A stretch of 64,000 bases of DNA. Source: Heteronotia binoei. Lineage: Eukaryota. The notes beneath the pieces were generated by a model. The model did no database searches. It was not told the origin of the DNA and saw only the letters and a program-made list of their open reading frames with translations. A program made the position numbers and the translations under genes. Location: NCBI RefSeq assembly GCF_032191835.1, contig NC_083223.1:54746001-54810000 (forward strand). Reading direction: 5' to 3'. Shown here piece after piece: positions 91 through 53,740 of this stretch (position 1 is the stretch's first letter; every line of letters begins with the position of its first letter).

Positions 91-827
91 AGTTAGAGTG
101 ATGAACTTTGTTCTACCTTACAGAGCAGTTCTGAAAATAAAATGGAGGAAAGGATAATATGGTAAACTGCCCTGAGCTCCTTGGAGGAAATGTACCTAAT
201 AAATAAAATTTAAGAATATGTTAAAGTTCCACTGATAATTTCAGTAGGAGTGTTAATGAACTTAGCACTGGATGCATTATGCTAGAAGATGAAAAACAGA
301 AGCTGTATTCAAAGTCATATGATTTTTTTCCAGGTACACTGTCACAGTGTCTCCACCCACCAGTTATTTTAGAATATTCTTCCTTCTTTTATATTCTTTC
401 ACTTTCCTTGAACAGAACTCAATGATTTCCAAGAAGACATAAATAGGCATTAATTTCTAACTTGTCTTTAATTCTTTCTCAATAGTTAAAGCGTTATTTG
501 TCCTGACAACAATACAAATGGATAGGACATGGATTCCTTTGTGGAATTGGATCATTTGTAACTAAAAAAAGCATAAAAGACTACAAAAGTCAAAAGGTTC
601 CTACTTTGAACTGTGTATTTATCGACTGAATCCTTTCTTTGTAAGAAAATTGTTTTTGCTTGGAGCTGGGAATGTGGCATCAGGAGCAGTTTAGAAGACA
701 TTCACAGCCTGTTCAAAATAAATGGAAGAGATGGTTTGAATTAAGGCACATTCCATGGGGAAGAGGGGAAAGAGAGCTTTGCTCCTTTAGCTGATACCAG
801 TTAAATACTTTTGTTATCTTGATTTTC

Positions 828-1043
828 GGGGGGGGGGGGGGGTGGGCTCCCTCTGGGAATCCTACCCCCCCAGGGAAAGTGCATGCGCAATACATAGCCT
901 CTCCTCTCCCGGTGTAGTGAACGCCGCGTGGTCACTGTCTGGCTATGCCTGGCAGATGGTCACTGCAATGGCCTCTCCTGCATTACTGCATCCGTAGCAA
1001 CACCTTCTCGCTGGTCCCCCCCGTTTTCACAGAGTTTGCTACG
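828..1043 (+). ncRNA. Predicted HDV-like (CPEB3-type, 1-bp P1.1) self-cleaving ribozyme at the RTE 5' end
   Basis: P1: G7 from the 828-842 G-run with C7 at 1016-1022. P2: CGTAGCAA 993-1000 with TTGCTACG 1036-1043. P3: ACC 1002-1004 with GGT 1013-1015. L3: TTCTCGCT. G1023 can pair with C1007 (P1.1). J4/2: CAGA 1030-1033. Manual fold only. Confidence 0.75.
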
Positions 1044-1598
1044 TCATGGTGCGACCGAATTGTCCGGCGGTATAACCGGATGGGCAGGCTGGGCCCACCA
1101 ACTTCGTCAGCCTAAGAGAAGGAAAACTCTAACATCAACTCTAACATCAAACCCGGGCAGATACAGCTCGTTAATGTAACACCTACCACCTGGAGGACTC
1201 ACTGCCGGCGTCCCGGCTTACTGGGCCATGGCAGATGACCCCCAGGTGAAAGGGTGGAGCCAGTACCGCGCACACTGCGCTTCACCTAAAAAATTCCTCT
1301 GCGCAGGCCTGAAGGGCATATCCACACACACAACCCACAACGCATCAAGTCCTGCAGCGATAGGCAAGGGGTGAAACGGCAGGTGGAAGGTGCCACTGGA
1401 AGCCGCAGTCCCGATCCTGCATGTAGGCGGTTCAGGATATTGGTCGCCTGATGCTAACCCGGAGACGAAAGCATCTTTCGGCAGCACCCTGAACGACCAA
1501 GCAGCCTTATCTAGGGACAGCACTGCTTGCTCCACACGGAGAGGGGCCTAGAAAAGGTGGCCTAAACAAAGCTCGTCTCCCCCACCCCAGTTGGCTAG

Positions 1599-4500
1599 CC
1601 GCGGTCAACGGGCATCCTTACTTGCGGTCGAAAAATAACAACAAAGAAAAGGCATGCACCTGCCTCACAAAGTGTGCAAAGACTAAAGCTTGCGTGTTGG
1701 AACATCAGAACCATGCTTGACACAGTAGGCAGTGGTCGCCCTGAACGACGCTCTGCTCTAGTTGCCCACGAACTTCTCAGGTTGAATATCGACATAGCAG
1801 CTCTCAGTGAGGTCCGTTTCCCTGAGGAAGGTAGTCTTCAAGAACACGGTGCTGGCTATACCCTCTACTGGTCGGGTAAGTCAAAGGCTGAGAGCCGCCT
1901 TTCTGGCGTTGGCTTCATGGTCAGGAACTCCATTGCCTCCAAACTCGAAAACCTTCCAACAGGTCACTCAGATCGCATCATGTCCATGCGCCTCCCACTT
2001 CAAAACAAGCAGCATGCAACACTCTTCAGTGTGTATGCCCCAACCCTTCAAGCAGATCCTGCAGAAAAGAACAAGTTCTATGCTGATCTACGCAACCTCG
2101 TACGGAAGACCCCTACAGAGGACAAGGTGATCATCCTTGGCGACTTCAATGCCAGAGTAGGTAAAGACTCGGAAGCCTGGAAAGGAGTACTTGGCAAACA
2201 CGGCATTGGCAACTGCAATGACAACGGGCGCCTCCTGCTAGAATTCTGCATGGAGCACCAGCTCACCATCACCAACACTATCTTCCAGCAGAAGAACAGT
2301 CTGAAGACAACCTGGATGCACCCACGGTCCAAGCATTGGCACCTTATCGACTACATTCTGGTGCGCCAGAGAGACCTTCGAGATGTCTTACACACCCGAG
2401 TAATGCCCAGCGCAGAATGTCATACGGATCATCGTCTTGTACGCTGCAATCTCCGTCTTCACTTTAAACCCACACCCAGGAGAGGAGGTATCCCTCGGAG
2501 GAAGTTTCAGGTTGGCAGCCTCCAGTCAGCCGAAGTTAAAGCTGCCTTCCAGGCAAAACTCCAGTCAAGAATTGAGGACCTCAGTTGCCCCACAGACCCT
2601 TCTCCAGAAGCACTCTGGGAACACCTAAAAACTACCGTCCTGCAGATCTCTGAAGAAGTCCTCGGGTTCTCCACAAGGAAGAACAAGGACTGGTTTGATG
2701 AGAACAATCAAGAGATCCAAGAATTACTGGCAAAAAAGACATCTGCCTACCAAGCACATCTTGCTCAGCCCTCCTGTCCTGGGAAAAAAGCAACCTTTCG
2801 CGCTGCATGTAGCAACCTCCAGCGCAAGCTTCGAGACATTCAGAACGAGTGGTGGACCAAGCTTGCAGAGAGAACCCAGCTGTGTGCAGACACTGGTGAT
2901 TTAAGAGGGTTCTACGAAGCCCTGAAGGCAGTATATGGTCCATCATATCAGGCTCAGAGTCCCTTGCATAGTGCAGACGGCCAAGTGCTCCTCACAGACA
3001 AGGCGTCCATACTGAACCGGTGGTCGGAGTATTTTCAGGTTCTCTTCAGTGCCAACCGCGTAGTTCAAGATTCAGCAATCCACCTCACCCCACTTCAACC
3101 GGTGAAAACAGAGTTGGATGAGATCCCCACCCTAGAAGAGACTGTTAAAGCCATCAAGCAACTGAAAAGTGGCAAGGCAGCAGGAGTTGATGGAATTCCA
3201 CCAGAGATCTGGAAGCATGGGGGCACAGTACTACATAGCTCACTTCACAAAGTACTTGTCACCTGCTGGGAACAAGGCAAATTACCACAGGACTTTCGCG
3301 ATGCAATCATCATCACCCTATACAAGAACAAAGGGGAAAAGTCAGACTGCTCCAACTACCGGGGGATAACCCTGCTCTCCATCGCAGGCAAAATCCTTGC
3401 CAGAATACTCCTGAACAGACTGGTGCCCACCATTGCAGAAGAACTCCTCCCAGAGAGCCAGTGCGGCTTCAGAGCTAACAGGAGCACCACCGACATGGTA
3501 TTTGTTCTCAGGCAGCTCCAAGAGAAATGCAGGGAACAGAACAAGGCTCTGTATGTGACTTTTGTCGACCTTACCAAAGCTTTCGATACCGTTAGCAGGA
3601 AAGGCCTGTGGCAAATCTTGGAACGTTTAGGATGTCCCCCAAGGTTCCTCAGCATGATCATCCAGCTACACGAAGACCAGCGAGGCCAAGTCAGACACTG
3701 CAACGACCTCTCGGAGCCCTTCCCAATAGGCACAGGTGTAAAGCAAGGCTGCGTTCTCGCGCCAACTCTCTTTACGATCTTCTTTAGCATGATGCTTCAA
3801 AGAGCCGCAGTAGATCTAGATGAGGACGATGGTGTCTACATCCGCTATCGCACCGATGGCAGCCTGTTCAACCTGAGGCGACTAAAGGCACACTCCAAGA
3901 CAATGGAAAAACTCATCCGAGAGCTACTGTTTGCTGATGATGCGGCACTCGTCTCCCACTCGGTATCAGCTCTGCAGCATATGACGTCCTGCTTTGCAGA
4001 GGCTGCCAAGCTATTCGGCCTAGAAGTTAGTCTGAAGAAGACAGAAGTTCTCCACCAGCCTGCACCCCAGGAAGATTATCACCCTCCCTGCATCACTGTG
4101 GGTGAATCAGTTCTGAAGACAGTCCAGCAGTTCAGCTACCTGGGGTGCATCATCTCCTCAGATGCCAAGATCGACAAGGAGATTGACAACAGGCTGGCAA
4201 AGGCAAACCGTGCATTTGGCCGACTGCACAAAAGAGTGTGGAGCAACAAGCATCTGAAAAAAGGCACAAAGATCAATGTTTACAAAGCGGTTGTGATGAC
4301 AACCCTCATCTATGGCTCCGAATCGTGGGTTTTATACCGTCATCACCTGCGACTCCTTGAGCGCTTTCATCAGCGCTGCCTTCGCACCATCCTCAACATC
4401 CACTGGAGTGACTTTGTGACCAACACTGAAGTCCTCAAGCGGGCGGAGGTTACAAGCATCGAGGCACTGCTGTTGAAGACACAGCTGCGCTGGGCGGGGC

Positions 4501-4898
4501 ATATTTCTAGGATGGAAAACCACCGCCTTCCCAAGATTGCCCTGTATGGCGAACTCTCCACCGGCCATCGAAATAGAGGGGCACCAAAGAAGAGGTACAA
4601 GGACTCCTTGAAGAAATCCCTTAGCACCTGTCACATCAACCATCACCAGTGGTCTGACCTAGCCTCAGATCGCAAAGCATGGAGGCACACCATCCACCAG
4701 GCTGTCTCTTCCTTTGAGAACACACGCATAGCTGGTCTTGAGGACAAAAGGAGATTGAGGAAGAATCGCACTGCTACAGGACCAACCCTAAATCAGACTT
4801 TTCCCTGCAGCCGCTGTGGCCGGACCTGCCTGTCCCACATTGGTCTTGTCAGCCACCAGCGAGCCTGCAGCAAACGTGGACTATTGCACCCTTCTTAA
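1599..4898 (+). CDS. RTE polyprotein: AP endonuclease + reverse transcriptase + C-terminal C2HC zinc finger (open from 1599 after TAG 1596; ORF track starts at GTG 1674)
   Basis: EN motifs WNIRT, SEVR, VYAPT, GDFNARVG, IDYILV, TDHRLV. RT motifs FVDLTKAFD, GVKQGCVLAP, LFADD, YLG. C-terminal CSRC-x12-H-x3-C. No internal stops. Confidence 0.95.
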   Translation, partial: PRSTGILTCGRKITTKKRHAPASQSVQRLKLACWNIRTMLDTVGSGRPERRSALVAHELLRLNIDIAALSEVRFPEEGSLQEHGAGYTLYWSGKSKAESRLSGVGFMVRNSIASKLENLPTGHSDRIMSMRLPLQNKQHATLFSVYAPTLQADPAEKNKFYADLRNLVRKTPTEDKVIILGDFNARVGKDSEAWKGVLGKHGIGNCNDNGRLLLEFCMEHQLTITNTIFQQKNSLKTTWMHPRSKHWHLIDYILVRQRDLRDVLHTRVMPSAECHTDHRLVRCNLRLHFKPTPRRGGIPRRKFQVGSLQSAEVKAAFQAKLQSRIEDLSCPTDPSPEALWEHLKTTVLQISEEVLGFSTRKNKDWFDENNQEIQELLAKKTSAYQAHLAQPSCPGKKATFRAACSNLQRKLRDIQNEWWTKLAERTQLCADTGDLRGFYEALKAVYGPSYQAQSPLHSADGQVLLTDKASILNRWSEYFQVLFSANRVVQDSAIHLTPLQPVKTELDEIPTLEETVKAIKQLKSGKAAGVDGIPPEIWKHGGTVLHSSLHKVLVTCWEQGKLPQDFRDAIIITLYKNKGEKSDCSNYRGITLLSIAGKILARILLNRLVPTIAEELLPESQCGFRANRSTTDMVFVLRQLQEKCREQNKALYVTFVDLTKAFDTVSRKGLWQILERLGCPPRFLSMIIQLHEDQRGQVRHCNDLSEPFPIGTGVKQGCVLAPTLFTIFFSMMLQRAAVDLDEDDGVYIRYRTDGSLFNLRRLKAHSKTMEKLIRELLFADDAALVSHSVSALQHMTSCFAEAAKLFGLEVSLKKTEVLHQPAPQEDYHPPCITVGESVLKTVQQFSYLGCIISSDAKIDKEIDNRLAKANRAFGRLHKRVWSNKHLKKGTKINVYKAVVMTTLIYGSESWVLYRHHLRLLERFHQRCLRTILNIHWSDFVTNTEVLKRAEVTSIEALLLKTQLRWAGHISRMENHRLPKIALYGELSTGHRNRGAPKKRYKDSLKKSLSTCHINHHQWSDLASDRKAWRHTIHQAVSSFENTRIAGLEDKRRLRKNRTATGPTLNQTFPCSRCGRTCLSHIGLVSHQRACSKRGLLHPS

Positions 4899-5165
4899 AT
4901 CTTCGTTCGCGAAGCCAAGCCGAGAGATCTTGATTTTCATTGTCCTTGTAAAACTGCAGATAAGCATCAATAGAATTTGTCAAGCTGTGCTATTGGGACT
5001 GCCCCATAAAAGGATGGCTTATAGGTAAGAGATGCCCCTACATATAATGTCAAAAATTTGAATTACAGATTAAGACAAATTTATGTAGTATACATGGTAC
5101 AAAAGGCTTATTTCGTTTGTCAAAAAAGGTGACAAAATTGGGTAACATCCAGCATGCTTGTAGAG

Positions 5166-5809
5166 CAGGGGTGTTAAATGTGTGGTCTGAGGGCTGGATC
5201 AAGCCCCCAGAGGACTCCTATCAGGCCTGCAAGCAACTCACTGTCATCTGCTTCCTTCTCTCTCTCTTGCTTCCCTCTGTATCACTGCTTGCTTTTTCAG
5301 GAGCTACAGAGCAAAGCCTCTGTTTTCTCCATTGGCTAGCCAGCACAGGAAGCAACTTATGTACAAAAGCTCATAATGCCCAGTCATTTCATGTTTTCCC
5401 TTGGGTCCTAGGCTCAAAGCATTGACCATGAGATTTTTGTAATGAATGTCCATAAATCAAAGTAGGTTTGCAACTTACAGATATATACCTGAACAACACC
5501 TGAACAGCATACTCCACATTGTTACCGCACATACATTGTTTCTAGATTTTGATGCAATAATTCAGAGCAAAAGGTGTCAGTTATCAGAAGCCGTTAAATG
5601 AACAAAACACTGGAAGAATGCTAATCTTTTAAGCATGTTTTATTTTAAACTTTTTTTCAAAACAAAAATTAATTGTGTAGGTCTGTGTCCTTTAAAAAGT
5701 TTATATCTTCATTACTTGGCATTATGTTTTATGATGCACACAGCCCAACCTGACAAAGTCTCATTTATATCAGATCCATCCCTCATAACAAATGAGTTCA
5801 ACACCCCTG
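5166..5809. mobile_element. hAT-like MITE
   Basis: Terminal inverted repeats CAGGGGTGTTAAA / TTCAACACCCCTG. No convincing 8-bp TSD and no coding capacity. Confidence 0.7.
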
Positions 5810-24156: not shown

Positions 24157-27100
24157 ATGGAGTCTTGTATCCAAGTCTCCAGTTTTCTTGTCAAGAAGCT
24201 GAATGGAGATAATTACAGCACCTGGTCTGAGAAGGTCACTATGCTTCTAAAATACCAAGGTTTGTGGGAGTACGTGACGAATCCACCCGATGTAGCCAGA
24301 TTAGACGCAGCTGATGATGCCGTAGAAATTGCTAAACACAAAAGCAATGAGGATAAGGCTTGTGCTTTAATTGGTCTCACTTTGGAAGACAGCCAGCTTA
24401 TCCATATAAAAACCTCCAACAGTGCAAAAGCATGTTGGGATGCCCTAAAGTCACTTTATGTCAGTGAAGGTGTGGGGTCCCATACATATTTAATGAAGAA
24501 ACTCCTTAAGGCAAGATATGAGGCTGGTGGGGATATGAGTAACCACCTAGAATTCATGAAACGTAATTTGCAGCTGCTGCAAGAGAAAGAGGTGATTTTT
24601 TCTGAGCAACAGCAAGCTTACATAATCCTTTGCTCCCTGGACGCTAGTTATAATCAGTTTGTAGCCAACTTGGATATATTACCAAGAACTGAGATAACAG
24701 TGTCTAACATCACCCACCGTTTAATGAATGAGGACATGAGGAGGAGGGATGCAGCTATGTTCCAGCAATCTCCAGCTCATTCAGTCAAGTCTCCCGGCCG
24801 GGAGGAATTTAAAGGGGCAGATAATCATGCAGCAAATGATAAAATTTACTCAGTAAGGAGATGTTTTTTGTGTAACAGCTCAAAACACCTCAAGCACCAA
24901 TGTAAACGCTTCAAGGAGAAACAGTCTTCAGTTACTCCCAAGGGAGGAAAGCACGTGAACCTTGTTGTTAACAATTCTTCCTACAGCACCCAGTTCTTAA
25001 TTGATAGTGGAGCGACAGTGAACATCATTAAGAACAAAAATCTCTTTGACACCTACACACCAGTTAAAGGTCAGTGTGTCAAATTAGCAGATGGGCTTTG
25101 TGCCCGGGTAGCAGGAAATGGTCTTGTTGAAATTCCTAGCCTTAAAAGGAAACTTCAAATGCTTCATGTGCCGAGTTTAAAGTATAATATGATATCTGTA
25201 TCTACTTTGACTGAGCAAAATTTTAAAGTCTCTTTTACAGCTGACAGCTGCCTGATTAATGCAGATGACATTTCTGTTGTGGCCAAAAGGAAAGACAATT
25301 TATATTTCTTGGAGAAAGAAAATATGATCCACCATGTGAGTATGAATAGGCCTCCTCACGAGGAGTGCATTCACATGTGGCACAGAAGGTTGGGGCATAT
25401 AAATTTCCATGCTGTTAAAAGAACATTACAAGCAGCTGAAATTACCCCCAAGGCCTGCAATTGTTTTGTTGACTGTGAAATCTGCAAAGCAACAAAATCA
25501 AAAGCAGCACCAACAGTATCTCCAACAAAATTCAAGACTGATGCAATACTGGACCTTGTTTTCCTTGACCTGATTGGACCCTTTCCAACCAGAAGTGTGG
25601 GCGGAGCTAAATTCTGTTTGCATATAGAGGATCATCATTCTCGCTATGGTTTTTGTTTTTTACTTAGATCAAAGGCTGAGACGTATCAAACTTTCAGCAA
25701 TTGGTTTCGTTTCATCAAGAGGAAAACAGATAGAGTTCCACGCACTATCATTACTGATAATGGTACAGAATTTTGTAATGATAAAATGTTTTCCCTATGT
25801 AGGAGATATGGAATCAGTCATCAACGTACGGCACCGTATCGACCACAACATAATTCATTTTGTGAAAGGAGAAATCAAACCCTTTATAATATGTGCATCT
25901 CTATGCTGAGAGATAGCAACCTACCAATGTGTTATTGGGGGGAAAGTATAATGTGTGCTTCCCATGTTCTAAATTACTCTTGGTCTTCTGCTATTGGAAA
26001 AATACCAGCTGAGATATGGTATGGCAGAAAAGTTACAATTAACCATATAAAGATATTTGGGATATCAGCTTATGTAAATATCCCAAAGCAGCTCCAGAGA
26101 AAGGGGCAAAACAAGGCTGTTAAGTTGTTATTTCTTGGTTATGCAAATAATCACAAGGCTTACAGATTTTCCCAAGTAGGTGAAAAGAAGATAACAACTT
26201 CGTGCTCTGCAAAATTTCTGGAAAACTCTGTGGGTTGGGAGAGAACGTCCTCTACAGTATTCCTGCCTACAGCAGAGAAAACTGATACGCAGCTACCAAC
26301 GAGAGGCGAGAGGCGGAGCCCTTCACCCAGCAGCAGAGACATCAAGCCAGAACCTGTAACACCTCCATCTTCAGGAGCGGGAGTGTCACAGCAGCAGCAG
26401 CAGCAGCCAGATGACCAGCATACAGCGCCAGATGAGGCAACAACACCGGTTCTACGACGATCTACGAGAGAAACACGTCCTCCAGATCGCTACAGTCCGG
26501 GCCAAGCGTGCATCGTTCTTGCTGAACCTTCTAGCTACGAGAGCATCAAGCATCTAACGCAAGATGAACAGACTGGATGGTCAGAGGCCATAAATGCGGA
26601 ACTTGAGTCGTTGAAAAGTCTGCAAGTGTATGAAGAGTCTGTAATACCACCTAACCAAAAACTCATAGGGTGTAGATGGGTTTTTAAGTTAAAATCTGGA
26701 TCTGATGGAAAGGTGCAGTACAAGGCTAGACTTGTGGCACAAGGGTACTTACAGTCAGCACTAGACTATGACGAAACTTTTTCACCAACACTCAAGGCCA
26801 CATCAATCTATTGTGCATTGTCTTATGCAGCAAAGCACAATTGTGTAATTAGACACCTTGATGTCAAAACCACATACCTGCACGCACCTCTAGAACATAC
26901 AATTTATATGAAATTGCCACCAGGTGTGTCTGGTGAAAATGGCAATGTTAATTCATGCTGGAAACTTAAAAAATCTTTGTACGGGTTAAAACAATCTGGG
27001 CATCAGTGGAACCAGTATTTAACAGAATGTTTGAAAAAGCTAGGTTTCAAACAAGGTGTAGCTGACCAATGTATATTTGTCAAGGGAAAAGGGGAGCAGC

Positions 27101-28056
27101 AATGCTTAATACTTGTTTTTGTAGACGACTTAGCTATAATTTGTAGAAATGCAAAAATGCTAAATACCATTGTTGAAACTCTAAAGAACCAATTTACAGT
27201 GAGGGATCTGGGCAACATCAGACAGTATGTTGGCTTAGACATAGAATGTGTAAATGGAGGGTACCGAGTCTCACAAAGGGGTAAAATAACTCAGTTATTA
27301 AAAAATTACAAAATGGACCAAAGCAAGGGAGTTAAATGTCCTATGCTGCAGGATTTTGATATTGATGACAATCAGAGTCCATTATTTGACCAAAGCATTT
27401 ATCAGTCCTTGATTGGCAGTCTTTTATATATAGCAAACTGGTCTAGGCCTGATATTGAGATGGCAACCAACCAATTGGCCAGGGCGGTGAAGCAGCCAAG
27501 ACAGTGCCATTGGATAGCGGCAAAACACATCCTTAGGTACTTGAAACATACCTTAGAATACAGTTTGTTTATTACACCTACTAAAGACCTAAGAATATAT
27601 GCTTATGCAGATGCAAGTTTTGCCAGTGACCAAAACACCCGACAGTCCACTACCGGATTGGCAATTTTCTTTGGTGGTGCACTAATAGGATGGAAATCTT
27701 TGAAACAGCGACATGTAGCCCTCTCGTCATGCGAGGCAGAGTATTCAGCACTCAGTACAGTGTGCAGTGAACTTATCTGGTACAAACAATTACTATCTGA
27801 CATTGGTTTGTGTTATGTAGAACCTATCACTGTGTATGAGGACAATCAATCAGCTATCAAGCTAGCAAACAGTCTAGGAGTAAAATCTAGATCAAAACAC
27901 ACAGATGTAAGGTTTCACAATGTAAAACAATGCTTGGAAGATAAACTAATCAATCTTGAATACTGCGCTACAGCTGAAAATATTGCTGATATCTTTACAA
28001 AGTCTCAGACACCTGTTAAACACAAGGACAACTGTCTGAAACTAGGTTTAAAGTAA
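24157..28056 (+). CDS. Copia Gag-Pol polyprotein, 1299 aa, uninterrupted
   Basis: Knuckle CFLCNSSKHLKHQC; protease IDSGAT; HHCC WHRRLGH...CEIC; integrase DLIGP / TDNG / ERRN; RT KARLVAQG, LYGLKQS, VFVDD; RNase H YADAS, CEAEY, EDNQSA, ADIFTK. Confidence 0.97.
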   Translation: MESCIQVSSFLVKKLNGDNYSTWSEKVTMLLKYQGLWEYVTNPPDVARLDAADDAVEIAKHKSNEDKACALIGLTLEDSQLIHIKTSNSAKACWDALKSLYVSEGVGSHTYLMKKLLKARYEAGGDMSNHLEFMKRNLQLLQEKEVIFSEQQQAYIILCSLDASYNQFVANLDILPRTEITVSNITHRLMNEDMRRRDAAMFQQSPAHSVKSPGREEFKGADNHAANDKIYSVRRCFLCNSSKHLKHQCKRFKEKQSSVTPKGGKHVNLVVNNSSYSTQFLIDSGATVNIIKNKNLFDTYTPVKGQCVKLADGLCARVAGNGLVEIPSLKRKLQMLHVPSLKYNMISVSTLTEQNFKVSFTADSCLINADDISVVAKRKDNLYFLEKENMIHHVSMNRPPHEECIHMWHRRLGHINFHAVKRTLQAAEITPKACNCFVDCEICKATKSKAAPTVSPTKFKTDAILDLVFLDLIGPFPTRSVGGAKFCLHIEDHHSRYGFCFLLRSKAETYQTFSNWFRFIKRKTDRVPRTIITDNGTEFCNDKMFSLCRRYGISHQRTAPYRPQHNSFCERRNQTLYNMCISMLRDSNLPMCYWGESIMCASHVLNYSWSSAIGKIPAEIWYGRKVTINHIKIFGISAYVNIPKQLQRKGQNKAVKLLFLGYANNHKAYRFSQVGEKKITTSCSAKFLENSVGWERTSSTVFLPTAEKTDTQLPTRGERRSPSPSSRDIKPEPVTPPSSGAGVSQQQQQQPDDQHTAPDEATTPVLRRSTRETRPPDRYSPGQACIVLAEPSSYESIKHLTQDEQTGWSEAINAELESLKSLQVYEESVIPPNQKLIGCRWVFKLKSGSDGKVQYKARLVAQGYLQSALDYDETFSPTLKATSIYCALSYAAKHNCVIRHLDVKTTYLHAPLEHTIYMKLPPGVSGENGNVNSCWKLKKSLYGLKQSGHQWNQYLTECLKKLGFKQGVADQCIFVKGKGEQQCLILVFVDDLAIICRNAKMLNTIVETLKNQFTVRDLGNIRQYVGLDIECVNGGYRVSQRGKITQLLKNYKMDQSKGVKCPMLQDFDIDDNQSPLFDQSIYQSLIGSLLYIANWSRPDIEMATNQLARAVKQPRQCHWIAAKHILRYLKHTLEYSLFITPTKDLRIYAYADASFASDQNTRQSTTGLAIFFGGALIGWKSLKQRHVALSSCEAEYSALSTVCSELIWYKQLLSDIGLCYVEPITVYEDNQSAIKLANSLGVKSRSKHTDVRFHNVKQCLEDKLINLEYCATAENIADIFTKSQTPVKHKDNCLKLGLK

Positions 28057-42985: not shown

Positions 42986-43197
42986 AGGGAAATATAAAAC
43001 ATTTTGAGCTAAATTTAGCTAGAAGCTAGAAGGGGAGGGCGGGGTGCGTACCCCCTGGAAGGTGGAAGACAGGATGATTGTCTAATCCAGAAAGTTGTCT
43101 GTGCCACAGGGGAAGGGAATGGGGGGTGGGTTTTTAGTAAGAAGTATAGTAAAATACTCTCAGCCAATAGGGCCCAAGTTTGTTACAAATAAAGAGA

Positions 43198-46100
43198 ATG
43201 GATAGATCTTTAAGAGTCCTTTCACTGAATGTGAATGGTCTAACATCAAGTCTTAAGAGATTCAGAGTAATTAAAATGGCTAAAGAACAAAGAGTTTTCC
43301 TGTTGTGCCTACAGGAAACTCACAAAAAAATAAATGATAGAAAACCATTGATAAAAGATTTGAGGTGGCAGGTTTTAGCAGAAGCAAGAGGGTCTTCCAA
43401 AGCTAGAGGTGTGGCTACATTGATTCGTAAGGATATTAAGGTGGAGAACATTGAAAAATTAGTAGATAAGGAAGGTAGATACCTGTTAGTTAAGTTTAAG
43501 CTGGAAGCCATAAAAATCACTATAGTAAATGTTTATGCACCAAATAAAAGACAAAGGAAATTCTTAAACTTGGTTTTTAAGAAGATACAACAGTTTTCAG
43601 AGGGCGAACTAATTGTAGTGGGCGATTTAAATACGGACATAACCAAGAACAATAGTATTAAGCTAAGAGATTGGGGCTTGAAGGACGCTCATGAGTTTAC
43701 CGACACGAGACCCAGCCTGACACACATTTCTTGTAGACATAAAACAGCATCCCGCTTAGATTATATAATTTTGGAAAAAAATAATAATATGGTGGTTAAA
43801 GAGATCAAGACCCATCCAATTTTGATTTCTGACCATGCCCCTCTAAGTATAGAATTAGAACTAAATCTTCCTTCGACAAACAGACCTTGGAGGTATAACA
43901 ACCTGGTAATGGCAAAAGAAGAGGATAGGGAATACTTAATGACACAGTTAAAATTATATTTTAAGGAAAATAGAGGAACTGTGCCAACTAATATATTATG
44001 GGACGCTGCTAAAGCGGTAATAAGGGGCCATTTGGTTAGGAAAGAAAAAGACATAAAAAGAATGGTATAAAAAGGGCAAACAAAACTTAATGAATTGGAG
44101 GAGTTACAAAATGAAATAATGGGAACGTGTAATCCTAGTTTACAGATTAGAATTAAAGAGATTCAAAAACAGTTGGAGGCCCTAGATATGGCAACAATGT
44201 GGAAAAAGGAAATAATGGTTAGGAACGACTTCCAGAGGAATAGCATTAACACAGCAAAAAGGTTAGCTAATTATTTGAAAGTTAAAAAGGCAAAACAATC
44301 AATTAGAAGTATTAAAATTAATAATAATACAACTCAAAACTCTAAGGAAATCACTAAGGCATTTGAAGACTTCTATAAAAAATTATATATGAAAAAGAAT
44401 ATAACGGAGGTGTGGGACGCACCTAAGCTAATCATAGAGGAGGAAGCAAAAGCCTCACTGGGAGCTGAGATTACACTCCAAGAGATAAAGGAAGTAATAA
44501 AAGCGCTCAAAAAAGGTAAATCACCAGGGCTGGATGGCTTTACTTCTGACTTTTATAAAGAAATGGTAGAAATTATAGCACCCGAATTGCAGGTAGTCTT
44601 TAACAAAGTCTTGGAAGGAAAGAAAGCCCCGGACTCATGGAAGGAAACAGAAATAATTTTGATATTAAAGCCCCAGAAAGACCCGGAAGAAGTAGGTTCG
44701 TATAGGCCCATTAGTTTACTAAATCAAGATTATAAGATCTTTGCTAAGGTTTTAGCAAATAGACTTAAGAGAGTTATCCCGTCAATCATAAAAGGGGACC
44801 AATACGGTTTTATTGAGGGTAGATCTATTGCCCATCCCATTAGAAATATTTTAAATGTACTGCACCATGGCCAAAAGAAAAAAATAGCTTTGTTAAAGTT
44901 GGATGTTTATAAAGCCTTTGATACTCTCTCACATGAATTCTTGTGGCAATATTAAAGAAGATAGGTTTAGAGGAACGGTTCTTACACGCTATACAGGAAA
45001 TATACAACGGAGGTAAGGCAAAACTTAGGTCGTTTTCGCACTTAGCGTTTGCTCCCCTTATTCCACGGCGCAATTATGTCCGGCTCATTTTCCTCGTTTT
45101 CGCACATGGACTCATTTGCGGAGTCGCTTTCCATGAAGCCCCGGCTCAAATCGTTTTCCCACTGGCATCGACTTGAGTTCGATGCCCTGTCAATCATTTT
45201 TTTTTAAGCGCAAGTCTGGTTGCGTAAGGACGTAATAACGTAACATCGAGCAGTCACAGCTGTTCCTTCCCCTTCTTTTCGTGGACAAACCGCATCACGT
45301 GTGCTGCTTCTGCTTATGGATTGGCTGCAGCTGTAGTATCCTCCACAGCCCTTTATGTATTAACAGAAGCATTCACAGTGGAGAATCCTAGCACTAGATT
45401 CCCCCCCCAAATTCTGAAGTTGCGAAATATCGCAATAACGAAGAGAGAGAAATCGAGGGGTTTGTGTGTGTGTGTGTGTGTGGCAGCTTCTTCCTTTCCC
45501 AGCCTCGCTCCCTCCCGGGTGGCGAAGCTGGGATTTCCTCCGCGCTCTTCCCCCTCCCCGGCTGGCGCTTGCAACGGGGACCTGACTGATTCCTGCCGCC
45601 AGAGCTCCCCCCCCGCCCCATTCTCTCCTTCCCCTTCTGTGGCGCGTGTGAAGAACGAGCTCGCGTCTATTTTCTAACCGAGCGGAATGTAGCCAGGGAG
45701 AAGAATGCAGGACTCCAACTTCCCATTTTATACATGGCGATTTTGTGCAGGTCCAGAAATCCTGGTGGCACAGCTGAGGGAGGCATTGCCTTTTTAAAAC
45801 ACACACACATGAACGCTTTGGCCCGTGCCGGCACTAGATTCCCCCCCCCCAACAATGTATAATGTAGTTGCAAGATAACGCAACAGCGAAATAACGCAAC
45901 TAAAGTCAATAATAATAATAAAAAATTCTAACGAAACCAATTGAAGTGGCAATTGAGGCTATTCCAGGAGGGTTTTTTTTTTCCTATTTGTTAATTTCGA
46001 AATATCGCTATTACGCAAGAAATATGAAGTTTAAAAAAAAATGGCCGTGCGGGCACTTTTGGGAAGCGCCGCGAACGGCTGATGATTGGTCAAGGGGGTG

Positions 46101-50011: not shown

Positions 50012-53000
50012 GTTCTAAGTCTGGAATTAAAATACTTTCCCTGAACGTTAACGGTTTGAATGAACCGGGAAAGAGGAAGAGAACCTTTCAGCAGCTGAAA
50101 AAATCTGATGCACAAATTATTTGTTTGCAAGAAACTCATATCAAGAAGGACAATGCAAAGTATTTAGAAAACAAGAAACTTGGCACCTTATACTGTTCAT
50201 GTGATCCTACAAAAAAAAAGGGGGGAGTAGCCATATTTGTATCTCAGCATATAAAGTCGAATTGCTTGTATTCGGATGAACAAGGAAGAATTATTATAGT
50301 AGAGGTGGAGATTAACGGTACCAAAACAATTCTTGGCAATATCTATGCCCCTAACGAAAACCAAGAAAAATTTTATCAAGCACTGTACCTCAAATTTAGA
50401 GAATTTGACTCTGACAGGTATTGCATTGTTGGAGATTACAATGCAATATTCGATACTAAAATGGATAAAAAATTTGATGATCCTCTAAAAAAGAAAAAGA
50501 ACCGGAACTTATTACCTAACTCTTTCATGAAAATGGCAGATGAATTAAATTTAGTCGATGCTTGAAGAACGAAAAATCCAAATACTAAAGACTTTACGTT
50601 CTATTCACATGCACATAAATCTTGGTCCAGAATAGATATGTGTTGGGTATCACTGAATCTTATATTGTCCATCAATCAAGTCGACATCTTACCTCAATCC
50701 TACGCTGATCATAGTCCAATTCTGCTAATCCTCCAGGAAAAATTAAGAAATCCCCGCTGGTCTCTAAACTTGCAAATTTAAAAAAAAACTCAATTTCTGG
50801 AAGCAGCTAAAAAAGAGGTTAAGGAATTCTTTGCCCTCAACTTGGAGAAAGATACAAGGATGCCAGTCATATGGGATGCATTTAAGGCCTTTTTTAGAGG
50901 AGTTGCTATCAGATACTCAGCGAAAAGGAAGAAAGAACAAAGGAAATCATACAATGAGCTTATAACCAAATTGGAGTCTTATGAGAAACAACAGAAAACT
51001 TTGAATTTAAGGGAGACGAAGGCCAAAATCACTTTTATTCAACATCAGATAAACCTTCTTTTGGCAGATGAAATTGAGAGAAAATTAAAATGGGCAAAGC
51101 AAAATCATTTTGAAAATGCAAATAAAGTGAGTAGATGGCTGGCTTACAGATTGAAGAAGGAAAAGGAGAAAAAGATTATAAAAATGCTGAAAAATGATGC
51201 TAAGGAGGAGGTTTTTTCAGAATTCTCAAATGAAAGATATTATTCAAAATTTTTATCGGAATCTTTACAAAGAGCAAAAGATAATAGACCAAAAACAAGA
51301 AGACTATCTGGAGGAAGTTAAAATGAAGCAATTAACACGGGAACAACAAGCAACTTTGGAGAATCCTATTTCAATTCAGGAAATTGTTGATGTGATTAAA
51401 ATTCAAAAAAGTAATAAGACTCCAGGCCCAGATGGGCTTCCGGTTGAGTTTTCTAGAGCTTTTGAAGATATATTATTGATGCCTTTCAAAAAAGTGATCG
51501 AGAGTATCCAAAATACAGGGGAGATCCCAGACTCCTGGAAAGAAGCTCTAATTACCCTGATTCATAAAGAAGGTACTGATCCATCAGAAATCAGAAACTA
51601 CAGGCCAATCTCTCTCCTTAATAGTGACTACAAGATTTTCGCCACAATTTTAGCAAATAGGTTAAAGAAAGTAATTGGTGGCTTAATCCATGAAGACCAA
51701 ACGGGCTTTGTTCCGGGTCGCCTTATGAGCCAGAATGTGAGGCTGCTATTAAATACGATTGAATATTACAGAGACCATCCTGACAAACAATTTGCGGGTA
51801 TCATGGTGGACGCCGAAAAAGCATTTGATAATGTGAACTGGAACTTTATGGGAGCGACATTGGCCGCGGCTGGCTGTGGTGAAAAGTTTTGTAAAATGGT
51901 TGCAGCAATCTACTCGAAGCAAGCAGCGAAAGTTAATTTCAATGGAGTGATGTCTGACCCAATAGAAATAGAACAAGGCACCAGACAGGGGTGCCCCCTA
52001 TCGCCCCTGCTCTTTATTTTGACGTTGGAACCTTTAATCAAGAAAATTAGAGAAGATCCCAAAATTCAAGGAGCCAGAATAAATAATGAAGAATTCAAGA
52101 CCTTGGCGTTTGCAGACAACTTAGTATTTATTTTGGAACAACCGATTTCTTCGATAGCTCTTCTAAAACAAAGATTAAGAGAATTCGGAGAAGTTTCCGG
52201 ATTTAAATTGAACGTCTCTAAGACAAAAATCTTAGCGAAAAACATGGATAAAGCCCAAATTGAACTTCTTGAACAACTTTCAGGATTTAAGTATGAAAGA
52301 AAAATAAAATACCTTGGAATTTATTTAACAAACGATTTAAAGAGTCTGTACAGAGACAATTATGAAAAAATACTGAAAGAGATCCGCAATGATTTAATCA
52401 GATGGAAAGACCTCCAAATATCACTCTTAGGCAGAATTGCTACAATTAAAATGAACATTCTTCCCAGAATCTTATTCTTTTTTCAAACAATCCCAATTAT
52501 TTTACCCAAGTTATTTTTCCAGCAACTTAACTGCATGACCAAGACGTTTATCTGGCAGGGTAAGAAAGCCAGAATAAAATTGAAAGTTTTACAGGACAGT
52601 AAATTAAGAGGCGGTCTGGCTCTTCCAGAATGGAACCTATACTATAAGGCCTGCTGTATTGCGTGGTTAAGAGATTGGTGTATGTTGAGTAACAAGAGAC
52701 TATTGGCCACGGGAGGTGCTGGTCTGGGGGAAGGCTGGCATAATTATATGTGGTATCATACTCCTAACAGATCCGGCCGTTTTCTTAGACATGAAATAAG
52801 AAGATCCCTATACAGGACCTGGCTGGAAATTAAAGTGCATTATTCTTATACTCCAAAGTGGATATCTCCAATAGAAGCTTTGACCCACCCTAATTTGTAT
52901 AATTGGGACAATCAACAAAACTATGGCTATTTGTTGGACGACCAGAACGCCCTGATCGAGGAAGAACTTTCCAAGCTGAGTTGGTGGGTACAATGTCAGC

Positions 53001-53740
53001 TTAAATCAAGATTTCAAAAGGATAAAGAAAAAGGATTTTCAAATAAACCAATTGAATTGGACCTTATTTTAGAGGCCAAGCAGAAGATTATCTCCAAGGT
53101 TTATGATTGGCTGCTCCAAATTAAGATGCAAGATGAGACTGTAAAAGAATCATGGATTCGCTGGTTGAAAGAGTTTGGATTTAACATGGACTTGGTTGAG
53201 TGGGAAAAACTATGGAAACAGAATTTGAAATTAATAAAACCAGCAGATTTTAAAGAAAACCTGTATAAAATGGTATACAGATGGTACCTCACTTCAGATA
53301 GACTGGCTAGAATATATCCCACATATTCAAACAAATGTTGGAAGTGTCGAGAAATTAAAGGATCCTTGTTTCATATTTGGTGGCAATGTGAAGATGCCAG
53401 AAAATACTGGGCCCAAGTCAATATTTGGGCACAAAAAATCTTGAAAATAAAAATTAGTCATGTACCAGAACTATACCTCTTGAATATTTGTAGACAAAAC
53501 TTTCCTACGACAAAACTAAAACTATTACTATACATAGTTACTGCTGCCAGAATACTTTATGCTAAGTATTGGAAGACCAATAAAATCCCCAACAGAGAGG
53601 AATTCATTACCAAACTGTTAGATGCTGCAGAATCTGATTTAATGTCCATAAGATTAAGAGATGGCAATGTGCAAAAATGCCAGGAGGAATGGGATCCCAT
53701 ATATAAGTGGGTAAAAAGTAAAGGTGTTGATTTGGAGTAA
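50008..53740 (+). pseudogene. L1 #2 ORF2 (EN-RT-Cys), disabled
   Basis: Stops at 50563 and 50779, a frameshift near 51215, and catalytic FADD changed to FADN (52109-52120). C-terminal CWKC...HIWWQC knuckle. Confidence 0.92.

What the first reader, a model, noticed from the sequence alone, without database searches (positions are those of the whole stretch)
828..1043. HDV/CPEB3-like ribozyme whose predicted cleavage site is the 5' end of an intact reptile RTE LINE
Seen: all nested double-pseudoknot parts occur in order. These are P2 CGTAGCAA/TTGCTACG (8 bp), P3 ACC/GGT, L3 TTCTCGCT (HDV genomic: UCCUCGCU; CPEB3: UUCACGU), a 7-C P1 strand, GT after P1 as in CPEB3, almost no P4 (TTTCA), and J4/2 CAGA (C-N-R-A, catalytic C1030). 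The 15-G run starting right after the TSD fits the model: G836-846 pair with CCTACCCCCCC (861-871) in a J1/2 hairpin, leaving the first Gs for P1. J1/2 is about 160 nt and has further hairpins. Known: HDV-like ribozymes process R2, L1Tc and invertebrate RTE transcripts and cleave 5' of G1. Inference: this element releases its own 5' end by self-cleavage. I do not recall this being described for squamate RTEs, but could not check.
Basis: partly seen in the sequence, partly recalled or inferred. Interest (0 to 1): 0.85.

Follow-up and report, generated by a model that had tools for sequence, protein, structure and literature searches.

The report
HDV-like ribozyme heading a gecko RTE
The first 216 bases of this young, very abundant RTE jumping gene fold like the hepatitis-delta-virus self-cutting RNA, and matching base changes in distant relatives support the fold, so the element probably cuts its own RNA free at its first base, as known for insect R2 and invertebrate RTE elements.

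Summary

By motif alone the match is weak. A loose HDV descriptor hits about 0.25 times per 64-kb strand of shuffled sequence. The comparative evidence is strong.
- The element (828-4926, 12-bp TSD, intact APE+RT ORF) has at least 2,220 copies of this head in its genome.
- The two main subfamilies differ by a compensatory A-U to G-C change in P2 (996/1040).
- Three relatives at 73-80% protein identity, from marine/ENA assemblies, carry the same architecture with other sequences. In one the head is not BLAST-alignable.
- P1, P2, P3 and P1.1 all covary.
- L3 (U..C..G), the G after P1', and C-N-R-A are invariant. P4 is absent in all.
- TSDs show that the G-tract is the exact 5' end in the window copy and in relative L121.

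Most likely this is a P4-less, long-J1/2 HDV-like ribozyme that releases the RTE RNA from read-through transcripts. Silkmoth R2 ribozymes have the same layout.

Cleavage itself is untested, and the RNA reads were inconclusive. The 5' G-tract is hypervariable in the youngest subfamily and often mismatches P1.

It is a new member of a known kind, of moderate interest.

The parts
816..827 (+). Target-site duplication, 5' copy (ATCTTGATTTTC).
   Evidence: The same 12-mer occurs at 4927-4938.
828..846 (+). G-rich 5' leader (G15-T-GGG in this copy). It is the exact 5' end of the element and is hypervariable among copies of subfamily A.
   Evidence: Flanks are unrelated in more than 60 copies.
828..834 (+). 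Proposed P1 5' strand (G1-G7). The predicted cleavage site is 5' of G828.
   Evidence: It pairs with C1016-1022 in the MFE fold. Subfamily B and C leaders start with exactly G7. P1 covaries in relatives.
835..992 (+). J1/2, 158 nt. Its first hairpin is G836-846 / 861-871, and it holds conserved boxes.
   Evidence: It is 82% identical to L037 and 65% identical to L035.
993..1000 (+). P2 5' strand (CGTAGCAA).
   Evidence: A996G is coupled with T1040C in subfamilies B and C. L035 and L121 have wholly different but still pairing sequences here.
1002..1015 (+). P3 (ACC/GGT) enclosing L3 (TTCTCGCT).
   Evidence: P3 is ACG/CGT in L035, a compensatory change. L3 positions U1, C3 and G6 are invariant.
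1016..1022 (+). P1 3' strand (C7).
   Evidence: It is GCCCCCT in L037 and L035 and ACCCCCT in L121, facing GGGGGGT at their 5' ends.
1023..1029 (+). G1023 (P1.1 partner of C1007) plus a short spacer that stands in place of P4.
   Evidence: The G is invariant. The spacer is 6-8 nt in all lineages with no helix. L121 has GG facing CC, a 2-bp P1.1.
1030..1033 (+). J4/2 C-N-R-A, with C1030 as the putative catalytic cytosine.
   Evidence: It reads CAGA, CTGA, CGGA or CCAA in the five lineages.
1036..1043 (+). P2 3' strand (TTGCTACG).
1185..1673 (+). The remaining 5' UTR. It is conserved at 74-82% in all relatives, whatever head they carry. Its function is unknown; a cap-independent translation element is one guess.
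1674..4898 (+). Intact RTE ORF (APE endonuclease plus reverse transcriptase).
   Evidence: There is no AUG upstream of the APE domain.
4899..4926 (+). Short 3' UTR, the end of the element.
   Evidence: The same terminal motif TCTTCGTTCGCGAAGCCAAGCC occurs in relatives.
4927..4938 (+). Target-site duplication, 3' copy.

Best explanation
Window 828-1043 encodes an HDV-like (nested double-pseudoknot) self-cleaving ribozyme that forms the 5' end of a young RTE-clade LINE.

Proposed mechanism, all inferred:
1. Copies are transcribed mostly by read-through from host or upstream transcripts.
2. The 5'-terminal G-tract pairs with the C-run 1016-1022 (P1).
3. P2, P3 and the one-pair P1.1 form around it.
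4. C1030 in J4/2 catalyses cleavage 5' of the first paired G.
5. This leaves an RNA that begins at the element's first base, with a 5'-OH buried in a compact fold. That RNA is the template for target-primed reverse transcription.
6. Being uncapped, it must be translated cap-independently.

The ribozyme is of the P4-less, long-J1/2 type.

Shown here:
- the motif and its position;
- the exact 5' boundary;
- conservation with compensatory changes.

Inferred:
- cleavage itself, its site and its role.
For: 1. All helices and core nucleotides are present, in order.

2. The 5' end is exact. A 12-bp TSD flanks the window copy and an 8-bp TSD flanks relative L121. More than 60 copies have unrelated flanks that stop at the G-tract.

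3. Within the genome, 2,220 copies carry the head. Subfamily A has P2 pair A996-T1040 and subfamilies B and C have G-C. Among the first 100 listed copies, one is a G.T intermediate and none is A.C. Both alleles are seen in RNA reads.

4. Across lineages:
- P1 pair 7 is G-C, U.G or U-A.
- P1 pair 1 is G-C or G.U.
- P3 pair 3 is C-G or G-C.
- P2 has four unrelated sequences that all pair.
- The second P1.1 pair is U.U in four lineages and C-G in L121.
- Overall, 93 of 100 cells are canonical, and 10 of 20 pairs show two-sided changes. None of 5,000 column shuffles reaches this.

5. Invariant positions match the known catalytic core: L3 U1/C3/G6, the G after P1', and C-N-R-A.

6. The L121 head is not BLAST-alignable with the others, yet it matches the strict descriptor. 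That descriptor has 0 hits in 430 kb of controls and 0 in 4,000 shuffles.

7. Plain MFE folding pairs the 5' G-run with the distal C-run in all four lineages.

8. There is precedent:
- Silkmoth R2 ribozymes have no P4 and a J1/2 of 216-498 nt, and an abalone HDV-like ribozyme has 5 nt in place of P4 (PMC3774820).
- Ribozyme cleavage at the 5' junction is reported for RTE, R4 and L1 clade elements (PMC3774820; PMC6765202).
Against: - No cleavage assay has been done.
- Rfam HDV-family models do not match.
- RNA reads show no pile-up of starts at 828. They include reads that run from other flanks into the element. The library looks unstranded and depth is low, so this neither supports nor refutes cleavage.
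- In the youngest subfamily A the first eight bases are hypervariable. Among the first 100 listed of 226 G/T-only leaders, the commonest is GGGGGTGG (about 27 of 100). It puts a U opposite a C in P1. One clade of at least four copies shares GGGTGGGG. So a perfect P1 is not required for recent spread, or else P1 forms in another register.
- In the window copy and in L121 the G-run (15 G) is longer than P1, so the cleavage register is ambiguous.
- Silkmoth P4-less R2 ribozymes had very low activity in vitro.
- The structural alignment of the five lineages was made by hand, guided by the model, because MAFFT misplaces the L3 gap. This favours the model.
- Only 4-5 independent lineages are available.
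Confidence: 0.68

Rival explanations
1. The double-pseudoknot fold is real and under selection but is not catalytic, or no longer is. On this reading it serves as a 5' structural module. It could protect the RNA end, bind the RTE protein, or promote cap-independent translation. The 5' end itself would be set by an internal promoter.
For: - Covariation proves pairing, not catalysis.
- P1 is often mismatched in the currently most successful subfamily.
- J1/2 and the boxes after P2' (GCGACCGA..GGTATAAC) are strongly conserved, as a promoter or protein site would be.
- Junction-spanning RNA reads exist.
- The ORF has no AUG before the APE domain, so unusual translation initiation is needed anyway.
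Against: Every nucleotide known to matter for HDV-type catalysis is invariant across lineages that have changed almost all helix sequences. These are L3 U/C/G, the P1.1 G, and the C and A of C-N-R-A. A purely structural role would not obviously fix the unpaired J4/2 C. In R2 and other elements the same fold does both jobs.
Confidence: 0.17
2. The 5' end is defined by transcription initiation at the G-tract from an internal promoter. The HDV-like core would be a decaying relic inherited from an ancestor that needed it.
For: - LINEs with internal promoters also have exact 5' ends.
- The variable number of 5' G's could come from reiterative initiation or cap copying.
- The other relatives examined (nine of the twelve protein look-ups with DNA) have different heads, so the head is dispensable for the clade.
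Against: A relic would not keep compensatory changes between two subfamilies that both amplified in this genome. It would also not keep the core intact in lineages 20-27% apart in protein sequence. G-to-T changes inside the leader are not explained by cap copying.
Confidence: 0.1
3. The resemblance to the HDV fold in a GC-rich 5' UTR is due to chance.
For: The loose descriptor hits shuffled sequence about 0.25 times per 64-kb strand. There is no Rfam hit.
Against: Covariation is seen in all four helices across 4-5 lineages. An independent match occurs in the non-alignable L121 head. P1 starts at the TSD-defined first base.
Confidence: 0.03

Closest known systems
R2 ribozymes of silkmoths (Bombyx mori and other Bombycoidea), HDV-like (Eickbush and Eickbush 2013, PMC3774820)
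   Same: - Nested double pseudoknot at the 5' end of a non-LTR retrotransposon.
- No P4 stem.
- Very long J1/2 (216-498 nt there, 91-158 nt here).
- Conserved P1.1/P3/L3, plus the catalytic C and a constrained A in J4/2.
   Different: - R2 is a site-specific element with a restriction-like endonuclease, co-transcribed with 28S rRNA. Its P1 5' strand is 28S sequence and cleavage lies upstream of the junction.
- Here the element is a dispersed APE-type RTE. The P1 5' strand is the element's own G-tract, and the predicted cut is at the junction.
HDV-like ribozymes of invertebrate RTE elements, e.g. the Anopheles drz-Agam-2 family (Ruminski et al. 2011 J Biol Chem, as cited in PMC3774820 and PMC6765202; the paper itself is not held in the library)
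   Same: Same clade of element and same proposed job: 5' processing of read-through transcripts, with cleavage at the element's 5' junction.
   Different: I could not compare sequences, and the Rfam drz models do not match. The ribozyme here has no P4, a homopolymeric G7/C7 P1 and a 158-nt J1/2. The host is a vertebrate.
Mammalian CPEB3 ribozyme and genomic HDV ribozyme
   Same:
- P1.1 is one C-G pair plus a U.U, as in CPEB3 (PMC4836649).
- J4/2 reads C-N-R-A.
   Different: Those ribozymes are compact (about 68-85 nt), with a P4 hairpin, a 1-2 nt J1/2 and a G1.U wobble at the cleavage site. The G1.U wobble is present in L037, L035 and L121, but the gecko family has G-C there.
Twister-variant ribozymes at 5' ends of RTE-superfamily elements (PMC7761336; PMC8501958)
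   Same: A small self-cleaving ribozyme serves as an exchangeable 5' head of RTE-type LINEs.
   Different: It is a different ribozyme class. I did not find twister in the alternative heads of this clade: there was no Rfam hit at E<=1 in L031-L037.

Membership tests
HDV-like self-cleaving ribozymes | Strand order P1 - J1/2 - P2 - P3 - L3 - P3' - P1' - P1.1 - (P4) - J4/2 - P2', giving a nested double pseudoknot. | tested here: met
   The order is the same in five lineages.
HDV-like self-cleaving ribozymes | P1 of 6-7 bp whose 5' strand begins at the cleavage site (+1, usually G). | tested here: inconclusive
   P1 is a perfect 7 bp in subfamilies B and C (leader starts G7), and also in L037 and L035. 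In the window copy and L121 a perfect 7-bp P1 is also possible, but the 15-G run leaves its register ambiguous. In many subfamily A copies there is one U.C mismatch.
HDV-like self-cleaving ribozymes | A 3-bp P3 closing a 7-8 nt L3 that carries the U and G of the reverse wobble and the C(s) of P1.1. | tested here: met
   P3 is ACC/GGT or ACG/CGT. L3 reads U-Y-C-N-C-G-Y(-U) in all lineages.
HDV-like self-cleaving ribozymes | P1.1 of 1-2 bp between L3 and the nucleotides directly after P1'. | tested here: met
   C1007-G1023 is invariant. The second pair is U.U in four lineages and C-G in L121.
HDV-like self-cleaving ribozymes | Catalytic cytosine at the start of J4/2 (C-N-R-A). | tested here: met
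   CAGA, CTGA, CGGA or CCAA, placed 2 nt before P2' in all lineages.
HDV-like self-cleaving ribozymes | P4 helix (stabilising, not essential). | tested here: not met
   Only 6-8 unpaired nt in every lineage. Natural P4-less members are known (PMC3774820), so this does not exclude membership.
HDV-like self-cleaving ribozymes | Helices supported by compensatory substitutions. | tested here: met
   10 of 20 pairs show two-sided changes, and none of 5,000 shuffles reaches the observed pairing. The subfamily A/B pair 996/1040 also covaries. Caveats: the alignment was made by hand and covers only five lineages.
HDV-like self-cleaving ribozymes | A match to curated covariance models (Rfam HDV_ribozyme, CPEB3, drz families). 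| tested here: not met
   No hit at E<=10 or in relatives at E<=1. This is expected given the long J1/2 and missing P4.
HDV-like self-cleaving ribozymes | Divalent-ion-dependent self-scission giving 2',3'-cyclic phosphate and 5'-OH ends. | not testable with these tools
   This needs an in vitro transcription and cleavage assay.
Ribozyme-terminated non-LTR retrotransposons (R2, R4, L1Tc, RTE, Baggins) | The ribozyme sits at the extreme 5' end, so that the predicted cleavage site equals the 5' junction of full-length copies. | tested here: met
   TSDs in the window copy and L121. Flanks diverge exactly at the G-tract in more than 60 copies.
Ribozyme-terminated non-LTR retrotransposons (R2, R4, L1Tc, RTE, Baggins) | The element RNA arises by processing of longer co-transcripts. 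| tested here: inconclusive
   RNA reads cover the element on both strands, and some run in from other flanks. There is no pile-up of starts at 828. Depth is low and the library looks unstranded.

The most novel reading that the evidence does not exclude
The substrate strand of this ribozyme is a self-renewing homopolymer.
- Reverse transcription to the RNA's 5' end adds or re-copies G's, with occasional errors. That would make the leader hypervariable and produce G15 runs in two distant lineages.
- A C-run P1' can pair in any register and trim the tract again.
- On this reading the 5' end is kept by a balance of extension and self-cleavage, not by faithful copying.

In addition, the ribozyme head would be an exchangeable module. 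It is carried by only some lineages of an RTE clade that has moved horizontally between marine animals and a land gecko.
Probability: 0.2. Interest if true: 0.75.

Novelty: new member of a known kind. Interest (0 to 1): 0.52.

Why it matters
If cleavage is confirmed, HDV-like 5' processing would extend from R2 and invertebrate RTEs to a currently expanding RTE in a vertebrate genome.

It would also provide a second, independent natural example of the P4-less, long-J1/2 design. That example comes with ready-made natural variants for testing which pairings matter:
- A-U versus G-C in P2;
- 7- versus 8-nt L3;
- many P1 leaders.

It bears on how promoter-less LINEs get a defined 5' end and how an uncapped RNA is then translated. 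Compact ribozyme heads of this kind are already used as 5' modules in R2-based gene-insertion tools (PMC13708176).

Tried and rejected
- Rfam scans of the window and seven relatives gave no ribozyme hit.
- Two scans of JGI metagenome contigs found no further copy of this head. One used a DNA pattern from the boxes flanking the core and had 0 hits. The other used the protein and returned 30 loci, none with the head.
- Twelve contig look-ups were made. Three relatives have this head: L035, L037 and L121 (the last only recognisable by structure). One look-up returned no DNA (P0003). The others carry other heads or, for L031, L122 and L123, are uninformative (possibly 5'-truncated). My descriptor found no convincing HDV-like motif in them; two loose-descriptor hits in L036 and L039 lack the conserved L3.
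- MAFFT alignments of the whole head and of the core misplace the one-base L3 length difference. I therefore could not use the count of structure pairs or build a covariance model. I counted pairs on a hand-parsed alignment instead.
- Laying RNA reads was inconclusive for cleavage.
- A TSD search in L035 and L037 found nothing convincing, so their 5' boundary is inferred only.
- Ruminski 2011, Webb 2009 and Webb and Luptak 2011 are not in the library. The known RTE ribozymes were therefore compared only through citing papers.
- Literature searches for ribozyme plus BovB, and for HDV-like plus lizard, found no prior description.

Full report
**What is there**

- a run of 15 G (828-842) followed by TGGG;
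- P2 CGTAGCAA / TTGCTACG (993-1000 / 1036-1043);
- P3 ACC / GGT (1002-1004 / 1013-1015);
- L3 TTCTCGCT;
- seven C (1016-1022), then GT;
- five bases in place of P4;
- CAGA (1030-1033).

The stretch is the head of a 4.1-kb element (828-4926). A 12-bp target-site duplication ATCTTGATTTTC flanks it. It has one intact 1,074-codon frame with an APE endonuclease and a reverse transcriptase, and only 28 nt after the stop. That is the RTE layout.

**Is it more than chance?**

On the motif alone, barely. A loose HDV descriptor matches shuffled copies of the window about 0.25 times per 64-kb strand. That descriptor asks for P3, a C at L3 position 3, a G after P1', C-N-R-A, P2 of at least 6 bp, and P1 within 250 nt. 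Rfam's HDV-type models do not match at E<=10. With a 158-nt J1/2 and no P4 that is expected. The case therefore rests on comparison.

**Copies in the same genome**

The genome (2.63 Gb) holds at least 2,220 copies of the head. This count comes from a pattern built from boxes outside the core. Many copies are near-identical to the window over 828-1100. In more than 60 copies that I inspected, the flanks are unrelated up to the G-tract. The 5' end is therefore exact.

The copies fall into subfamilies.

| Subfamily | P2 | L3 | Bases between P1' and CAGA | Leader |
|---|---|---|---|---|
| A (window) | CGTAGCAA / TTGCTACG | TTCTCGCT | GTTTTCA | two G-blocks |
| B | CGTGGCAA / TTGCCACG | TTCCCGCT | GTTTCTCA | G7-A-G4-T-G3 |
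| C | as B | as A | as A | G7-T-G6-T-G3 |

- The A-to-B difference in P2 is a compensatory A-U to G-C change at the paired positions 996 and 1040.
- Among the first 100 copies listed, one is the G.U intermediate and none is A.C.
- Both alleles also appear together in RNA reads.
- In B and C the leader starts with exactly seven G, then a non-G. This matches the seven C of P1'.

**Relatives elsewhere**

The protein's nearest relatives are 80% identical contigs from ENA metagenome assemblies, some of them labelled marine. Next come amphioxus (78%), a carp (72%), mantis shrimp, prawns and a sea urchin.

All relatives share the downstream 5' UTR (window about 1185-1680) at 74-82%. The head upstream of it differs between lineages.

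Three relatives have this head:
- **L037** (protein 80% identical, head 82%).
- **L035** (protein 73%, head 65%).
- **L121** (sister of L035 by protein). Its head is not BLAST-alignable but has the same architecture.

Parsed side by side, the parts read as follows.

| Part | Gecko A / B | L037 | L035 | L121 |
|---|---|---|---|---|
| P1 | GGGGGGG / CCCCCCC | GGGGGGU / GCCCCCU | GGGGGGU / GCCCCCU | GGGGGGU / ACCCCCU |
| P3 | ACC / GGU | ACC / GGU | ACG / CGU | ACC / GGU |
| J4/2 | CAGA | CUGA | CGGA | CCAA |

- P2 has four unrelated sequences that all pair: one bulge in L037, two U.U in L035 and one A.A in L121.
- L3 keeps U1, C3 and G6 in all lineages.
- The G after P1' is invariant.
- The second P1.1 pair is U.U in four lineages and C-G in L121.
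- No lineage has a P4.

Counted over 20 pairs in five lineages, 93 of 100 cells are canonical and ten pairs show two-sided changes. None of 5,000 column shuffles reaches either figure.

A stricter descriptor adds the L3 pattern. It finds the window, L037 and L121, but nothing in 430 kb of control DNA on both strands. It also finds nothing in 4,000 dinucleotide shuffles of each head. Ordinary MFE folding pairs the 5' G-run with the distal C-run in all four lineages. In L121 an 8-bp TSD (TTAATGAT) shows that the DNA copy starts at the G-run.

Caveats:
- The five-lineage alignment was parsed by hand with the model in mind, because MAFFT misplaces the L3 gap.
- I had seen the L121 motif before I wrote the strict descriptor.
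- There are only four or five independent lineages.

**What it most likely is**

[quoted passage not shown] Every nucleotide known to matter for this ribozyme class stays fixed while the helices change sequence. This argues for catalysis rather than only structure.

The layout has a close precedent. Silkmoth R2 ribozymes have no P4 and a J1/2 of 216-498 nt, and an abalone ribozyme has five nucleotides instead of P4 (PMC3774820). Cleavage at the element's 5' junction is reported for RTE, R4 and L1-clade elements (PMC3774820; PMC6765202). The one G-C plus U-U form of P1.1 is that of CPEB3 (PMC4836649).

**What speaks against, or stays open**

- Cleavage was not and cannot be tested here.
- RNA reads from three raw RNA-seq runs and one set of metatranscriptome contigs cover the element from about 828 onward on both strands, and hardly cover the unique flank. 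They show no pile-up of starts at 828, and they include reads entering from other flanks. With low depth and an apparently unstranded library this decides nothing.
- The leader of subfamily A is hypervariable, which is more telling. 226 copies have G/T-only leaders. Among the first 100 listed, the commonest first block is GGGGGTGG (about 27). Next come G7 or G8 (about 21), GGGTGGGG, GGGGTGGG and GGTGGTGG. All are followed by a constant T-G6-T-G3.
- One and the same body haplotype carries four different leaders, while one clade of at least four copies shares GGGTGGGG. The leader therefore changes much faster than the body and is only partly inherited. Lineages with a U opposite a C in P1 have still multiplied.
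- Copies that start with the second G-block alone are rare: 6 in the genome. Cleavage at that block is therefore not the usual route.
- The window copy and L121 both have G15, longer than P1 needs.
- A homopolymer P1 can pair in several registers. Reverse transcriptases are known to add or re-copy bases at template ends. I offer a balance of extension and trimming only as a hypothesis.

**Rivals**

A structural but non-catalytic module, or a relic beside an internal promoter, cannot be excluded. I give these about 0.17 and 0.10. Chance is excluded for practical purposes.

**Novelty**

Ribozyme heads on RTEs are known from invertebrates: HDV-like ones and twister variants. HDV-like ribozymes on vertebrate R2 are also known. 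I found no description for squamate or other vertebrate RTEs, but key papers are not in the library. An earlier unchecked note of this scan names the host as the gecko Heteronotia binoei; I did not verify this. Two other first-stage notes flagged the same motif in other copies.

Verdict: a well-supported new member of a known kind, of moderate interest, with an unexplained hypervariable substrate strand.

Noticed in passing
window 828-846 and the same place in other copies (L001-L030, L051-L090, L124-L143): The G-rich leader changes far faster than the rest of the element. The same 1.5-kb body haplotype carries four different leaders. T's appear at varying positions in the first eight bases, and the run length varies. 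Subfamily B leaders are uniform (G7-A-G4-T-G3).
   Followed up: partly
window 1185-1673: The rest of the 5' UTR is conserved at 74-82% in all relatives, whatever head they carry, with long invariant blocks. There are hints of covarying hairpins, for example around 1640-1665. It holds no conserved ORF and its function is unknown.
   Followed up: partly
window 1597-1700: The RTE frame opens about 38 codons before the first conserved APE residues (ACWNIRTM). It has no AUG until the M inside that motif, so translation probably starts at a non-AUG codon or by an internal mechanism.
   Followed up: no
window 1110-1160; L032 300-500; L035 250-460; L121 1400-1530: Between the head and the conserved UTR lies a unit of about 40-70 nt (CTAGGAGARGGAAAACTCTGAT..AAAC). 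It is repeated one to three times in tandem, with a different number in each lineage.
   Followed up: no
whole element; relatives P0001-P0060: The nearest proteins (66-80% identity) come from amphioxus, carp, mantis shrimp, prawns, a sea urchin and ocean metagenomes. The host is reported to be a land gecko, and the family is very young there. This looks like a horizontal transfer followed by a burst.
   Followed up: partly
window 1016-1022 in other copies (e.g. L053, L055, L059, L071): The C-run of P1' is expanded to 8-15 C in a fair share of copies, mostly older ones.
   Followed up: no
window 24157-28056: An intact 1,299-codon Ty1/copia-type polyprotein frame (gag, integrase, RVT_2).
   Followed up: no
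window 43180-44955 and 51194-53740: Further LINE fragments. APE and RT domains lie in separate frames at 43180-44955, and an 848-codon RT frame lies at 51194-53740.
   Followed up: no
window about 5155-5400: A repeat of about 240 bp, with thousands of copies at 81-88% identity in the genome, lies just downstream of the RTE. It is probably a SINE.
   Followed up: no
L122 1-6031: A marine metagenome contig carries two elements of the window's protein clade head to tail, about 1 kb apart. They have a different G-rich head (TGGGGAGGGTTGGGG...) in which I could not recognise an HDV-like core.
   Followed up: partly
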